From Podarcis liolepis (taxonomy: Eukaryota): a DNA stretch of 64,000 bases. Every line of letters begins with the position of its first letter. Position 1 is the stretch's first letter. Location of the stretch: the NCBI GenBank assembly GCA_965112155.1, contig OZ218114.1; one strand, written 5' to 3'. The translations under genes and the position numbers were made by a program. Below the pieces are notes generated by a model that saw only the letters and a program-made list of their open reading frames with translations, searched no databases and was not told the DNA's origin. Shown piece after piece: positions 30,264-56,000 of this stretch.

Positions 30264-33200
30264 TTATAATTCATCATTGGTTCTGGTGTCTTCCCTTGTT
30301 TCCGACCTCTTGTCAGTTTGTGGCCCTGAAAAGAGCAAGAGCAGAAAAACCGTAATGAATCAAAACTGTGCAGCATGGACAACAACTTTCCAAATCAAGA
30401 TAGTACCAGGGAAACATGTTCAGATACACAAAGAGTAAGAAAAATTTCTGCAACAGCAACAGGGTAGCAGGGTTAGAAAGCAAGAGCAGGCAGATAAAGC
30501 CATGGCTTGAGACTCAAACGTATTAGCGGATGGAAGAGCATTTAGAATTGAAAAGTAAAGGGTTGCTACCTCTACAAATCCCAACCCTAACCCTCGACGG
30601 TTCCAAAGGAATTTAGTTCTTCAAGATTCCCAGTGCCAACCCTTGTGCAGTGCAGGGATGAGGTAAATAGGAAGTAAGAAAAGGGTAATTGGGGAAAAAA
30701 ATACATTGCCATCCTTGAGATGCATGCTGCATAAAAATTCAATCTGTTTTGTGGCACTTTAAACCCACACATTTGTGCCACTTAAATTCCCTAGAGAAAT
30801 TGGAGTTCTTGTTGACACTGCACTGAAAAGGATATATCAAGAACTCTGGCCAAAAGTTTCAATATAAGGAATAATTCCTACTCAAGCGTTAAAATGAAAA
30901 ACGTGTATATTCTGCTAAGAATAACAGTTTGAAGCTAGTGATAAGTTTAAACACAACGTGTAAGTACAATGGTTTTAAAGTAATAGTAAGTTTGGATACA
31001 ACGTTTAAGTACAGAAATAATGTAGTTTCAAATATACAGTGATATAGTACAAGGGTACATGAAATACCAGTGCACAACAATTGTTTTATACAAGTCTCAA
31101 TAGTAGTCAAAAAGAGTCCACATTATATAAAATCAGAATAAAGAATAAAGAGTAAAGGATCAAATAGGGCCAAAAAGGAGTATCCGAAGTGTGAATCAGA
31201 TGTACGACTCAGTAGTAGTAACCAGGACAGGGCCCTGTTTCGGAGACACGCCTTCTTCAGCTTGGTTTTTTTGACGACTATAAATCTGTTGGAAGTCTGT
31301 ATCATTTAATTCTTTTATGTTTCTTTTTCGACATGCGTCTTAGATAATTGCATCCAAGTTTTCTTGCGTTTCTCTGTGCGTTTTGTACTATATCACTGTA
31401 TATTTGAAACTACATTATTTCTGTACTTAAACGTTGTATCCAAACTTACTATTACTTTAAAACCATTGTACTTACACGTTGTGTTTAAACTTATCACTAG
31501 CTTTAAACTGTTATTCTTAGCAGAATATACACGTTTTTCATTTTAACTCTTGAGTAGGAATTATTCCTTATATTGAAACTTTTGGCCAGAGTTCTTGATA
31601 TATCCTTTTCAGTACTTAAATTCCCTACACATGCTCTTGAGGCCCCTTCCTCCATCAGGACTGTTGAGATCACTTGGGGAGGAGCTTTTGCCAGGAGCAC
31701 CCTTCCCCTGGGTTGGCAGGGCAAGGAGGAGAGAGCAAGCCTTGTCTGGGAATAGCTCATCCCTCTGTATTACTGTCTTTTCTCCTCCCTCCCTGAATGT
31801 TGGAAATGCTCTTGGTGCCCCTTGAGCAACACAGTGCCCAGTGTCTTTTCTGAAAGCAGCCACGTCTCCCCCTGTCTTGCAGCCAATTCCCAGGGTGGCA
31901 TGGAGTTTCCCAGCATCAACTGTATGAATTGACTACGGCTATTAAAATAGTAATTTGGATAACTTGTTTCCTTACATTGTTTCACATTGTGAATTTGAGG
32001 CCCACAATAGCATGGCTCCAGAATAAAAGGTTCCTGAATTCCCACTATGATGTGGAGAACCCAAGAAAAAGCAATCACATGGCCTAGGGAACTCCAATGC
32101 TCTCAGCCCAATATTTCCTTATCAGAGTTCTGCTCAGTGATCGAAATAAATCGATTCATTCCTTACCAGAGTCTGGTCCCAATTCATCATCCAGTGGTGC
32201 TTTTTCTTCTATGGGTGGTTCTTTGACTGGGCTAGCATCTTCTGGTTTATCTGGTTGGAAGGAGAAAAAAAGGTATCCATAGTTGCAGAGGTATGTGCAA
32301 TGACCAAACTGGATGCACACCACATCACCCAAGAGAAATTTCATGGAGCAACCAACCAAAGGCTAGAAGAGGCAGCAAAGACTGAGGACCCTCTTTTACA
32401 CCAAGCAGTCTTCCACAGGGCTAGTTTCAAACACCAGGGAATATGAAGAGGGGAATTAGAAGACTACTGATGCTGCTGTGAGACCATCTCACCTTTTTGA
32501 TTCTCATCCTTGGGAGGAATGACTTTTTCACCCTCAGGAGGCACAGTGGTGTTCTTGCCCGCTTCTGTTTTTGTGGTGTTCTTCTTGGGGGGCCTGATCT
32601 TTGAAAACTTGGCTTTGTTGAGGAGGTATTGCACTTCCCTGTCCAGAGCTGCAATCTTCAGCTCAATGTCTTTGGAAAGCAGAATAGGCTTCTCGGCGGG
32701 TGACAGCTTGGTCTGTTCTGCCAGGGTCTCATTCTTCCACAACTAAAACAAACAAACCCAGGAAAACATATTATCCTTAGGCTCCACCTGATAAGACCAG
32801 CCTTGTTTGGTGCTGTTCATTACCAAGTGCCAATGGCCTTCTGACCTGACACAACTCCACTACTCAGTGCATAATCACTGCTTAAAAGCTCCATCTGGCC
32901 TCTGCTGAGCCCTATTTCTACAACCATCCATTCATTCGTTCATACCCCCCCACTCCATAAAGTGAGCACAAGTTGTGGGCTTACTGTATTTTGGCAGGAT
33001 TCTTAGGTTTACCTGTGAACTGAATCACAACATTCTAAGTAAAAAGAACAAAAAGGGTATCTTTTGGAGCCTAGAGCAGAAGGGACAAGACGTGCACATC
33101 CATGAACGCACATAGTTTGGATACTGAAAAGATTTTCTGCACTCCTTGCGACCCTTCTTACCGTTGTCTCGTTGATAACTTTTTCCAAGGTGCTTAGCTC

Positions 33201-53000: not shown

Positions 53001-56000
53001 AGGCTGCAGCAGCAAGTTTAAAAGGGCTTGCCATGATTTTTACATTAAGTGGAGCAGCTGCTCCTGTGCTGCGTTTTGCAAGAGGAGCTGTGTGACTTGT
53101 TGCCATGGAGAATAAAAGGCAGGAGTACACTGCTTAGCTCTTTTTTCCTTATTATTATTATTTATTGAAATTCACAAAAAACAAACAGACAGACAGACAA
53201 AAACCTTTAACATAGACCATATATTACGGTATATTATCAATTGACTTTTCATCCTCCCCTTCTATGGTTTCCACATTTACCCTTGAATGCTGCATATTTC
53301 ACGTATACTATCCAATACAGTCATACCTTGGAAGTCGAACGGAATCTGAAGTCCGTTCAACTTCCAAAACGTTCAGAAACCAAAGTGTGTCTTCTGATTG
53401 GCTACAGGAAGTTCCTGCAGCCAGTCAGAAGCCGCGCTGGACTTTCGGCTTCTGAAAATCATTCGGAAACCGGAACACTCACTTCTGGTTTTTGTTCGTT
53501 TGGGAGCCGAAACGTACGAGTTCCAAGGCATTTGGCAACCAAGGTACGACTGTACATCCATGTTAACCTATTTATCTTAATAATGAACGCTGTTGCTCAT
53601 ATTTCAAGTCCTGCTCGCGTTTTCATCTCACTATAGGTAGTTCTTCAAATACTTAGTTCTAACCCCAAGATACAGGGAAACTGGGGTCTGCTTCTGCAGT
53701 TGGCTCAGCCTGTCTTGCCCTGGGAGTGTTATCCATGCTTGTGTCAGAAGCCCTCTTCAGGTGTCCTATCAGCATGTAGAATATTACTGGTGGAGGGGGG
53801 GCATGGGGATGGGAGTGCTAGCTCTGCCCCCCTCATTTTCATTCCTGTTGCCCTCCTCCAAGTTGGAGGCCAATTGTCTGAAGCTCTGAGCTTCTTGTAC
53901 TTGTTGAGGCTCCCTGTGTACTTTTAAACTCCGAAGTCAGGGTTCTAAAATGCCTTGGAGAGTTTCCTTGAGTACAGGAGGCTCCCCGCTTTGCAAGGTC
54001 AGCATCCAGCATGCGGAGGACCCACAGGAACGGCGGTGAGAGGGGCAGAACTGGCAAACTTATCTCACAAACTTTCCATGTGTGATAGTTCTGCAGCACA
54101 CATTTCCCTGTGTGTTTTGGACTACAGTTCCTATCAGCCCCCATCATCACACAGCGGTTGTGCTGGCTAGGACTAAGGAGAGTTATCCTGCAAAACATGC
54201 AGAGGGCACCCGGTTTGGGAAAGCTGTTCTGCTTGAAGGCAGAAGGCCAACACATTGGCTCCAGAGCAACCTCTCTCTCCTATCACCTGTCCTTCTTTTG
54301 TGCAGAACTACCAGGAAGCCCTACGTTACATTGGGAAGCTGCCCTTTGAGCAGGCCGAGAGCAACATGAAGCGGTATGGCAAGATCCTCATGCATCACGT
54401 CCCGAATGAGACCACTGAGCTCCTGAAGGTCCTGTGCACGAACTACCAGCCGGTGGGGGATCGTGAGGGTCCTGGAGCACTGGAAGGGAGGAAGGTATTG
54501 GCTGGATTTGGGGTGGTGTGTGTGTTGCTGCCCGTTGCTTGTGCAGCTGAGGGTGGTGCTCACCAAGGAGAGCAGGGGGATGAGGAGTAATCGGCATTAA
54601 GTGAACAAAATGCTAAGTGTAAAATACAGTCTGGGCAAGCAGGCTTAGTGGTGATAGCCTGCAGGGTATTGTGGGGGACAAACAGAGTCATAGAACTGTA
54701 GAGTTGGAAGGGACTATTAGGGTCATCTTGTCCAACCCCTGTTGCCCAAAGTGGGGTTCAAACCCGCAACCCTGAGATTAAGAGCCTCATGCTCTACCGA
54801 CTGAACTGGTTGGAAGGCAGGGATGTTGAACAACCTCTGGGAGGCAACAAAGGGCTCAGACCTGTGTGGCTTGCAGAGTTTTTGCTTGTCTGGTTGCTGT
54901 TCAGATAAGCCATTCTTCCCCATACAAACACACACACATACCTCATACCGGGTTTATTGCAATAGCACTTGCTGATACTTGCTGTGTCCTGAGCACCAGC
55001 CAGTCTTTGCTAGGCTCCTTGTAGGGCAGGTGTGGGGAGTCACTGACCCTCCAGGTGTTGCTGAAGTACAGCTCCCATCCTCTCTGGCCATTTGCTTGCT
55101 GGGGCTGGTGGGAGTTGTAGTTCAGCGACGTCTGGAGAGCCAAAGGTTCCCCACATGTGTTGTGGGGGGAGCTCTGGGACATTTGGGGCTGCCGAAGGCT
55201 CTGCCAGGAGAACTGAGACACAGAATGTTCCATCTAGACTGGCTACTGCCTGCCTTTCCCCATTCTCTTCTCTCTTTGTAATATAGGCAAATCCTGATGA
55301 GTTCATTCCCATTTTTGCCAACAACTCCCGGGAGCTGAAGGCCTTCCTAGAGCACATGTCAGAAGTGCAGCCAGACTCTCCACAGGGCGTGTACGACACA
55401 TTGCTGGAGCTCCGCCTCCAGAACTGGGCGCATGAGCAGGATCCACAGGTCAGTCCTCCATCCGCTTGGGGTCAAATTTCTAGTTGTGCCCAGGGGAGGT
55501 TGACTGGTGGAAGCCATTGGCAGCAAGGTCTTGGGTGACCTGCCTGGTGAAAATCTGGCTGGCAAGAGAGAAAAGCTCAATTCATGGGGCTCTGGTTCAA
55601 GGTGCCTGTGACACAGGTGGCTAACCCATCTTTTGGCCTGAGTGCCACATTGAACCTTGGTCAACCTTCACAGGGGGCAAGGAACTGCGTTCCAGGGGTG
55701 GGTGCTCACCAGATACTATCACATACTGTTTCCTGCACACACAAACGCAGCTGATCTATGCAGAAAACTGCGAAGTGGAGATTATCTTTTCCTCTCTGTA
55801 CACCAAATGACCAGTTGGATGACCAGGAACAGGACAGTTTGCACCCACACAAACACCCAATTAGGGCCCACCCACCACACAGCAGTATGTCTGTTTCATT
55901 ATTATTTTCTGCCAAAGTTGGAGGGTTATTGGGGCAGTGCCAGAACAGTTGCTTGGAGGTGTGTGTCTGGATCAGACTCTCGAAATGAAGCGTATCCACC

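What the first reader, a model, noticed from the sequence alone, without database searches (positions are those of the whole stretch)
31220..31267. Minimal hammerhead ribozyme, sense to HYOU1 pre-mRNA, in the loop of the inverted repeat
The minus strand reads AACCAAG-CUGAAGA-A-GG(CGUGUCU)CC-GAAAC-AGGGCCCU-GUC/CUGGUU. All hammerhead core elements are in order (CUGANGA, GAAA, GUC). Stem I closes the ends (type I), stem II is very short, and stem III is the perfect 12-nt palindrome ACAGGGCCCUGU. Minimal type-I hammerheads with palindromic stem III are the known hallmark of Penelope-like pLTRs and are thought to cleave best as dimers. Predicted cut is after C31226 (between 31226 and 31225). Because it is co-oriented with an ER-stress-inducible gene, every HYOU1 transcript would carry a potential self-cleaving site. 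If dimerisation in trans is needed, cleavage could depend on transcript concentration; that last point is speculation.
Basis: partly seen in the sequence, partly recalled or inferred. Interest (0 to 1): 0.85.

Follow-up and report, generated by a model that had tools for sequence, protein, structure and literature searches.

The report
Penelope-type hammerhead motif in intron
A hammerhead-ribozyme-like string in the last intron of an HYOU1-like chaperone gene is real, but it is the usual ribozyme motif carried by a very young, not yet fixed Penelope-like retrotransposon fragment, and nothing shows that it cuts or regulates the host gene.

Summary
All hammerhead core boxes are in order, helix III is a 12-nt palindrome, and the predicted cut is after C31226. 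The motif lies sense in the last intron of an Hsp70-superfamily gene that ends in NDEL.

It sits in an 820-bp insertion (30794-31613) with a 14-bp target-site duplication, 231-nt inverted arms and a 28-nt one-sided tail. That is the anatomy published for 5'-truncated Penelope-like elements (PLEs).

Public reads show a high-copy family in three species. Its ends are fixed on the left and variable on the right, so the element's sense strand is the motif's strand. The empty site is present in all three DNA runs, so the insertion is young and not fixed.

The motif shows three of the four emergent PLE mini-hammerhead traits: an extra base after A9, a G10.1-C11.1 pair and a palindromic helix III. 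Helix II is only 2 bp, then a C.U mismatch, then 1 bp.

Rfam models give no hit even at E<=10. The hammerhead fold is 8.5 kcal/mol worse than the best predicted fold.

Verdict: a new member of a known kind. Any effect on HYOU1 is unsupported. First-stage notes of this scan report many similar PLE hammerheads elsewhere in this genome.

The parts
31220..31267 (-). Whole hammerhead-type motif (type I, helix I open)
   Evidence: Sequence read. It is the only hit of the descriptor scans in the window.
31261..31267 (-). Helix I, 5' strand AACCAAG (one bulged A)
   Evidence: Pairs with CUGGUU at 31225-31220, 6 pairs. The A-run just upstream varies in length among paralogues (table 4: 31265/31266).
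31254..31260 (-). Core box CUGAAGA (C3-A9)
   Evidence: No substitution at 10% share or more is listed here among paralogue contigs of three species (table 3; 22 rows were not shown).
31253..31253 (-). Unpaired A between A9 and G10.1
   Evidence: An extra base at this position is a stated trait of PLE mini-hammerheads (PMC4209133). Anolis Poseidon_Ac has a U here.
31242..31252 (-). Helix II and loop 2: GGCG-UGU-CUCC (G-C, G-C, C.U, G-C)
   Evidence: About half of the paralogue depth has one extra base in loop 2 (T put in behind 31245 on the + strand, table 4).
31238..31241 (-). Core box GAAA (G12-A15.1)
31227..31238 (-). Helix III: perfect 12-nt palindrome ACAGGGCCCUGU. It can form a 4-bp hairpin with a GGCC loop, or a 12-bp duplex between two molecules.
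   Evidence: The predicted dimer forms the 12-bp duplex.
31225..31226 (-). Predicted scissile bond: after C17 (31226), before C1.1 (31225)
   Evidence: Position follows from the GUC triplet. Cleavage was not tested.
31220..31225 (-). Helix I, 3' strand CUGGUU
30794..31613 (.). 820-bp insertion of a Penelope-like element fragment (32% G+C, against 46% for the window)
   Evidence: Empty-site contigs skip 30780-31613 in runs X1, X3 and X8 (table 5). Summed depth is about 100-fold above the flanks (table 2).
30780..30793 (.). Target-site duplication, left copy ACTTAAATTCCCTA
   Evidence: The value 'both = 14' at the joint agrees.
31614..31627 (.). Target-site duplication, right copy
30794..30821 (-). 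28-nt one-sided 'tail' beyond the inverted arm
   Evidence: Paralogues end at either about 30795 or about 30820 (table 7). The tail signature is described in PMC8557442 and PMC11167929.
30822..31382 (-). Longer 5'-truncated copy (561 nt), 3' end at the left; it contains the motif in sense
   Evidence: High-depth paralogue contigs bridge 31052/31053. Others depart at 31340 or 31381, which marks variable 5' ends on the right (tables 7-8).
31383..31613 (+). Short inverted 5'-truncated copy (231 nt). It is too short to reach the motif.
   Evidence: It has two mismatches to the other arm (30887/31548, 30931/31504).
30326..32166 (-). Last intron of the HYOU1-like gene (GT at 32166-32165, AG at 30327-30326), 1841 nt. 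The cut site is 941 nt from the 5' splice site.
   Evidence: The reading frame runs ...GPDSG|[20 protein letters not shown]. The splice sites are inferred, not shown by RNA.

Best explanation
The motif is the hammerhead-type element of a Penelope-like retrotransposon (PLE) family. It was copied into the last intron of the HYOU1-like gene as part of a 561-nt 5'-truncated copy, joined head-to-head to a 231-nt inverted copy.

In the parent element such motifs lie in the pseudo-LTR. They are thought to process element transcripts as dimers or with help from the element's own protein.

At this locus the motif is a passenger. It is a single copy with a very weak helix II and a much more stable competing fold, in an intron that is spliced out. 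Autonomous cleavage of the host pre-mRNA is expected to be negligible.

Shown: the string, the insertion anatomy, the high-copy family, the strand of the element, and that the insertion is not fixed. Inferred: that the family is a PLE (no RT/EN ORF was seen), that the motif is that family's ribozyme, and that it is nearly inactive here.
For: (1) The core is complete and in order, and the cut site is as predicted.
(2) Three of the four traits that Cervera & De la Pena list as emerging beyond their descriptor are present: a base between A9 and G10.1, a G10.1-C11.1 pair, and palindromic 15.2-16.2/loop 3. The fourth trait, consensus families full of covariations, could not be assessed here.
(3) The insertion has a 14-bp TSD, inverted 5'-truncated twin copies, a 28-nt one-sided tail and no poly(A). 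This matches the published PLE insertion anatomy.
(4) Paralogue contigs in three species end at two fixed points on the left (about 30795 and about 30820). On the right they end at variable points (31340, 31381). The element's 3' end is therefore at the left, and its sense strand is the motif's strand.
(5) Chance expectation is low: 0.04 per window for a fitted descriptor, and 0 in 400 windows when a palindromic insert of 6 nt or more is required.
(6) The motif is a 56% G+C island in a 32% G+C element.
(7) Variation among paralogues falls in loop 2 and in the A-run outside helix I, not in the core boxes (table 4).
(8) Weakness at this locus: the hammerhead fold is -2.1 against an MFE of -10.6 kcal/mol, and there is no second copy in the window.
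(9) The Anolis PLE hammerhead needs PLE protein and shows no cleaved ends in RNA-seq.
Against: No Rfam hammerhead family matches, even at E<=10 on a 111-nt search.

Helix II (2 bp, a C.U mismatch, then 1 bp) is far shorter than the 6-8 bp reported for PLE mini-hammerheads.

No covariation could be tested, because the paralogues are nearly identical over 31188-31384. Their conservation may only reflect youth.

No RT/GIY-YIG ORF of the family was seen, so 'PLE' rests on insertion anatomy.

The distance from the cut site to the 3' end (about 405-430 nt) is about twice that in Anolis Poseidon_Ac.

The few RNA reads from paralogues in organism G are antisense to the motif, if the library is of the usual stranded type.
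Confidence: 0.7

Rival explanations
1. Chance look-alike. The retroelement is real, but the hammerhead-like string in it is a coincidence of a GC-rich palindrome with short core words. It never served as a ribozyme for the family.
For: No Rfam hit at any threshold. Helix II is nearly absent. The hammerhead fold is strongly disfavoured, and the whole segment is no more stable than shuffles (z = 0.46). Conservation among paralogues is not informative, because the flanks are equally conserved. My descriptors were fitted after seeing the site.
Against: The motif lies on the element's sense strand. It has the extra base after A9, G10.1-C11.1 and a palindromic helix III, none of which a chance core needs. 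There were 0 hits in 400 simulated windows once the palindrome is required. PLE pseudo-LTRs are exactly where such motifs are expected.
Confidence: 0.2
2. Active intronic ribozyme that affects the host gene. The motif cleaves HYOU1 pre-mRNA, alone, by pairing through the palindrome with a second transcript or with RNAs of paralogous copies, or with PLE protein. Cleavage lowers or modulates mRNA output.
For: The core is intact and the motif is sense in the pre-mRNA. Helix III can form a 4-bp hairpin in a monomer or a 12-bp duplex in trans. The family is young and abundant, so element RNA and protein may be present.
Against: The insertion is absent from contigs of all three DNA runs laid, so it is no conserved regulator. 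The hammerhead fold is 8.5 kcal/mol above the MFE, and even the predicted dimer does not form helices I and II. PLE mini-hammerheads cleave poorly in vitro. The Anolis one leaves no cleaved ends in RNA-seq. No RNA data exist here for the filled allele.
Confidence: 0.05
3. The GC-rich palindromic segment is a different functional element of the retroelement, such as a protein-binding or dimerisation site for its RNA. The hammerhead resemblance is vestigial.
For: It is a GC island with a perfect 12-nt palindrome in an AT-rich element. No substitutions are listed over 31188-31384, while the 3' part shows about 20 listed differences from paralogues (table 3). PLE protein binds element RNA near the hammerhead in Anolis.
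Against: A palindrome alone does not explain an intact CUGANGA...GAAA...UH order with correct spacing. Table 3 is incomplete (22 rows not shown), so the conservation contrast is uncertain.
Confidence: 0.05

Closest known systems
Minimal hammerheads of metazoan Penelope-like elements (Cervera & De la Pena 2014, PMC4209133)
   Same: Both are type I with an open helix I. Both have a short helix I, an unpaired base between A9 and G10.1, a G10.1-C11.1 pair and a palindromic helix III. Both lie in a PLE terminal region, often occur as single motifs in truncated copies, and are reported in reptiles.
   Different: Helix II here is 2 bp + mismatch + 1 bp instead of 6-8 bp. Helix III carries a 10-nt palindromic insert (12-nt palindrome in all) instead of none or 2-4 nt, so a monomer hairpin is possible.
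Hammerhead of Poseidon_Ac (PAc), Anolis carolinensis (PMC11167929)
   Same: The order of parts is the same: CUGANGA, one extra base, helix II, GAAA, C...G, UC cut. Both lie near the element's 3'-terminal unit, with a 'tail' made by two RT start sites.
   Different: PAc has a helix II of about 6 bp and a loop-less helix III (CG), and its ORF start lies at the start of helix II. Here there is no ATG and no long ORF downstream (stop at 31123). The cut site is about 405-430 nt from the 3' end, against about 200 in PAc. I see no sequence similarity by eye.
Conserved intronic hammerheads of amniotes (Rfam Hammerhead_HH9, HH10)
   Same: Both are sense-oriented hammerheads inside an intron of a protein-coding gene. 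This comparison rests on my own knowledge of De la Pena & Garcia-Robles 2010.
   Different: HH9 and HH10 are canonical, with loop-loop contacts, and are conserved across species at orthologous sites. This motif is not matched by those Rfam models and is absent from the orthologous site in related species.
Animal non-LTR retrozymes (tandem hammerhead repeats; bioRxiv 10.64898/2026.07.22.740005)
   Same: Both are non-coding, PLE-derived sequences carrying type-I hammerheads. Monomer derivatives are scattered in introns and intergenic DNA.
   Different: Retrozymes are head-to-tail tandem units. Here there is one motif in an inverted twin insertion with a TSD, and no tandem.

Membership tests
Hammerhead ribozyme (any type) | Conserved core: C3 U4 G5 A6 N7 G8 A9 ... 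G12 A13 A14 ... A15.1-U16.1, H17 not G | tested here: met
   CUGAAGA at 31260-31254, GAAA at 31241-31238, U16.1 at 31227, C17 at 31226.
Hammerhead ribozyme (any type) | Three helices around the core that the RNA can adopt | tested here: inconclusive
   Helices I (6 bp with a bulge) and III (4-bp hairpin or 12-bp duplex) can be drawn. Helix II is 2 bp + C.U + 1 bp. The fold scores -2.1 against an MFE of -10.6 kcal/mol, and pair probabilities are 8% or less.
Hammerhead ribozyme (any type) | Site-specific self-cleavage after H17 | not testable with these tools
   The RNA run laid (X23) is from a species that lacks this insertion.
Rfam hammerhead families (Hammerhead_1, _3, _II, HH9, HH10) | Covariance-model score at or above the gathering threshold | tested here: not met
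   No hammerhead match even at E<=10 on 4.5 kb or on 111 nt, and none in the whole window at gathering score. The PLE mini-hammerheads were found with a custom RNAmotif descriptor. Whether Rfam models detect them at all was not tested.
PLE minimal hammerhead (Cervera & De la Pena 2014) | Unpaired nucleotide between A9 and G10.1 | tested here: met
   A at 31253. The trait is stated.
PLE minimal hammerhead (Cervera & De la Pena 2014) | G10.1-C11.1 pair | tested here: met
   G at 31252 pairs with C at 31242.
PLE minimal hammerhead (Cervera & De la Pena 2014) | Palindromic 15.2-16.2 and loop 3 (dimer-capable helix III) | tested here: met
   ACAGGGCCCUGU at 31238-31227 is a perfect palindrome. The cofold forms the 12-bp duplex.
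PLE minimal hammerhead (Cervera & De la Pena 2014) | Large helix II (6-8 bp) | tested here: not met
   Only G-C, G-C, C.U, G-C. The listed paralogue variants (insert behind 31245, loose ends at 31246/31248) show the same stem letters.
PLE minimal hammerhead (Cervera & De la Pena 2014) | Consensus families with covariation and compensatory changes within a genome | tested here: inconclusive
   Paralogue contigs show no listed substitutions in the motif, only loop-2 and A-run indels. With no variation there can be no covariation. Paralogue sequences themselves could not be fetched.
Penelope-like element insertion | 5'-truncated copies with a fixed 3' end, often with an adjacent inverted 5'-truncated copy | tested here: met
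   231-nt inverted arms, with one copy extended by 330 nt. Among paralogues the left ends are fixed and the right ends vary. The anatomy is described.
Penelope-like element insertion | Optional 30-40 bp 'tail' at one end, from two RT start sites | tested here: met
   28-nt extension at 30794-30821, on one side only. Paralogue ends lie at about 30795 and about 30820. It is slightly shorter than the published range.
Penelope-like element insertion | Target-site duplication | tested here: met
   14-bp ACTTAAATTCCCTA on both sides, and empty-site contigs with the same 14 nt once.
Penelope-like element insertion | Family encodes a telomerase-like RT with a GIY-YIG endonuclease | not tested
   This copy has no long ORF. 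There is no other copy in the window.

The most novel reading that the evidence does not exclude
The family's hammerhead is a distinct architectural variant: a near-absent helix II and a long palindromic helix III. It would act only as an intermolecular dimer or with PLE protein. In carriers of this insertion it would cut HYOU1 pre-mRNA in trans-pairing with abundant RNAs of paralogous copies. That would make host mRNA output depend on retroelement expression.
Probability: 0.03. Interest if true: 0.7.

Novelty: new member of a known kind. Interest (0 to 1): 0.25.

Why it matters
The finding shows that a tool-less reader can pick out a Penelope-type mini-hammerhead that the Rfam models miss.

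It also documents a very recent, still segregating PLE insertion inside a stress-chaperone gene. A locus with filled and empty alleles is a natural experiment. Allele-specific RNA from a heterozygote would test directly whether a PLE hammerhead, or the 231-nt intronic hairpin around it, has any effect on a host transcript.

Beyond that the case is ordinary. Thousands of such motifs are reported per genome in PLE-bearing vertebrates, and their in vivo cleavage remains undemonstrated.

Tried and rejected
Rfam cmscan on 4.5 kb, on 111 nt and on the whole window gave no hammerhead match.

Single-strand folding did not recover the hammerhead. The segment is no more stable than shuffles.

BLAST of the element against the window found no further copy, only its own arms.

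Descriptor scans for other PLE-type hammerheads in the window found none.

Exact-pattern scans for the motif, with loop 2 or all of helix II left free, found 0 matches in metagenome contigs (two scans), viral contigs and prokaryotic genome contigs. No paralogues were available for covariation.

The supplement of PMC4209133 is not held, so no reptile mini-hammerhead alignment could be compared.

A DNA-transposon reading (MITE with long terminal inverted repeats) was rejected. The ends are asymmetric (one-sided tail), the TSD is 14 bp, and paralogues show one fixed and one variable end.

An L1/CR1 twin-priming reading was rejected. In that case the inverted part would not duplicate the same 3' segment (own knowledge).

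A retrozyme reading was rejected because there is no tandem.

I did not fold the Anolis PAc hammerhead as a positive control, because that would have required typing a sequence.
Full report
**Observation**

On the minus strand, 31267..31220 reads AACCAAG CUGAAGA A GGCGUGUCUCC GAAA CAGGGCCCUG UC CUGGUU.
- All hammerhead core positions are present and in the right order: C3-A9 at 31260-31254, G12-A15.1 at 31241-31238, U16.1 at 31227 and C17 at 31226.
- Helix III is the perfect 12-nt palindrome ACAGGGCCCUGU (31238-31227).
- Helix I is AACCAAG/CUGGUU, six pairs with one bulged A.
- Helix II is weak: G-C, G-C, a C.U mismatch, then G-C closing a UGU loop, preceded by an unpaired A (31253).

**Gene context**

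The minus strand carries exons of an Hsp70-superfamily protein (Pfam HSP70, E = 2e-6 and 7e-6; PDB Hsp70/Sse1 matches).
- The penultimate coding exon ends ...GPDSG at 32167, followed by GTAAGG.
- The last exon starts after ...TTTTCAG at 30325 and reads [20 protein letters not shown].
- The motif is therefore sense in a 1,841-nt last intron, 941 nt from the 5' splice site.
- The splice sites are inferred from sequence. The name HYOU1 rests on my recollection of that protein.

**What the motif sits in**

The motif lies in the 330-nt spacer between two 231-nt arms that are 99% complementary (30822-31052 and 31383-31613).
- The whole 820-bp block 30794-31613 is flanked by a 14-bp direct duplication, ACTTAAATTCCCTA (30780-30793 and 31614-31627).
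- A 28-nt unique extension lies on the left side only (30794-30821).
- There is no poly(A).
- The block is 32% G+C, against 46% for the window. The motif is a 56% G+C island within it.
- Published descriptions of Penelope-like element (PLE) insertions list these same features. They are strong 5' truncation, an adjacent inverted 5'-truncated copy giving inverted repeats, a 30-40 bp 'tail' at one end, and hammerhead motifs in the pseudo-LTR (PMC8557442).
- In the Anolis Poseidon element the tail is explained by two adjacent internal RT start sites (PMC11167929).

**Evidence from public reads**

I laid Logan contigs of three DNA runs (organisms A, B and G) and one RNA run (organism G) on 30400-32100 at 80% likeness or more.

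(a) All three DNA runs contain a contig that joins 30779 to 31614, with 14 shared letters. This is the precise empty site. The insertion is absent at this locus in B and G, and an empty allele exists in A, the best holder. The word shares of about 0.4 in the other species equal the share of flanking sequence. The insertion is young and not fixed.

(b) Summed depth over 30799-31596 is about two orders of magnitude above the flanks in all three species. That indicates a high-copy family, although the tool warns that depth is not a copy number.

(c) Loose ends of paralogues cluster at 30795 and 30820 on the left, with unrelated flanks beyond. On the right, paralogues depart at different places (31340, 31381). 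High-depth contigs bridge the arm/spacer boundary 31052/31053. The only listed piece bridging the spacer/right-arm boundary 31382/31383 has single-copy-like depth.
- The unit 30822-31382 is therefore colinear with the family.
- Its fixed (3') end is at the left and its truncated 5' end is at the right.
- The element's sense strand is the minus strand, which is the strand of the motif. A chance motif had an even chance of failing this check.

(d) Within the motif, the listed variation among paralogues is an extra base in loop 2 and length changes of the A-run 5' of helix I. The extra base (T put in behind 31245) accounts for about half of the depth in all three species. No substitution is listed between 31188 and 31384. 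About 20 are listed between 30816 and 31187, but 22 rows were not shown, so I give this contrast little weight.

(e) The few RNA reads of organism G come from paralogues. They share private variants and, if the library is of the usual stranded type, they are antisense to the motif. They say nothing about this locus.

**Is it chance?**

- A descriptor fitted to the candidate finds only this site in the window, with 0.04 expected per 64 kb in a first-order Markov null.
- A second descriptor requires a palindromic insert in helix III. It finds only this site, and only at its lowest stringency.
- Over all insert lengths that second descriptor gave 0.05 hits per window. For inserts of 6 nt or more it gave 0 hits in 400 simulated windows.
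- The descriptors are post hoc, so these numbers flatter the site.
- Even so, location inside a PLE-type insertion and on its sense strand makes coincidence the minority reading.

**Comparison with known PLE hammerheads**

Cervera & De la Pena (PMC4209133) describe metazoan PLE mini-hammerheads as follows.
- They have an unpaired base between A9 and G10.1, and a conserved G10.1-C11.1 pair.
- They have palindromic 15.2-16.2 and loop 3.
- They are probably active as dimers and poorly active in vitro.
- They are found in thousands of mostly single copies per genome, reptiles included.

The present motif has the extra base, the G10.1-C11.1 pair and the palindrome. It lacks the large helix II. It also has an unusually long palindromic insert, so that a monomer could close helix III as a 4-bp hairpin.

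The Anolis Poseidon_Ac unit, read across its tandem junction, shows the same order: CUGAGGA, U, a helix II of about 6 bp, GAAA, CG, UC. That hammerhead cleaved only when PLE protein was added. It was dispensable for insertion in vitro, and no RNA-seq reads began or ended at its cut site.

**Competence at this locus**

- No Rfam hammerhead model matches, even at E<=10 on a 111-nt search.
- The hammerhead secondary structure scores -2.1 kcal/mol. A competing fold at -10.6 kcal/mol pairs C3/U4 with the helix II strand and buries the GUC site in a CAGGGC/GUCCUG hairpin.
- Pair probabilities for the hammerhead helices are 8% or less.
- The predicted homodimer forms the 12-bp palindrome duplex but not helices I and II.
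- The short inverted copy does not reach the motif, and the window holds no second one. No tandem dimer can form in the pre-mRNA.
- Nearest-neighbour energies ignore the core's tertiary structure, so this does not prove inactivity. It does make efficient autonomous cleavage unlikely.

**Verdict**

The functional extension is not supported. That covers the claims that every HYOU1 transcript carries it, concentration-dependent cleavage, and a link to ER stress. The insertion is not fixed, activity is doubtful, and no RNA data exist for the filled allele.

It is a new member, with an atypical helix II/III balance, of a known and very abundant kind. First-stage notes of this scan list 89 entries in this genome that mention Penelope and hammerhead together. 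One of them covers this same insertion. These notes are unchecked leads, not support.

**Limits**

- I could not fetch paralogue sequences.
- As a result, covariation and the presence of an RT/GIY-YIG ORF in the family remain untested.
- I built no consensus of the element.

Noticed in passing
window 30822-31052 and 31383-31613: The two 231-nt arms (2 mismatches) lie in the same intron. The pre-mRNA of the filled allele could fold into a long, near-perfect double-stranded hairpin with a 330-nt loop. That could be a substrate for RNA editing or dsRNA sensing, and it is arguably more consequential than the hammerhead. It is covered by sibling note s1-846474.
   Followed up: partly
window 30986-31072: A subfamily of paralogues in organisms A and B lacks this 87-nt segment. 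The joint runs 30985->31073, with AAGGTA in between in X1. The same skip is seen as an apparent strand switch in X3 record 14. The segment spans the arm/spacer boundary of this copy.
   Followed up: no
window 31152: Paralogues in organisms G and B carry 7-nt or 17-nt deletions starting here. The expressed paralogue(s) in the RNA run X23 carry the 7-nt deletion.
   Followed up: no
window 54751-54807 (-): Partial tRNA match (Rfam RF00005, 31.4 bits, model positions 9-63 of 71). It is probably a tRNA-derived SINE fragment rather than a tRNA gene.
   Followed up: no
window 31123-31305 (-): A 60-aa ATG ORF runs through the hammerhead motif and stops at 31123. It shows no resemblance by eye to the N-terminus of the Anolis Poseidon_Ac protein. 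In that element the ORF starts inside the hammerhead.
   Followed up: partly
window 31768-31938: RNA reads of organism G cover this unique part of the intron, with first mates on the + strand. This fits unspliced minus-strand pre-mRNA in a conventionally stranded library.
   Followed up: no
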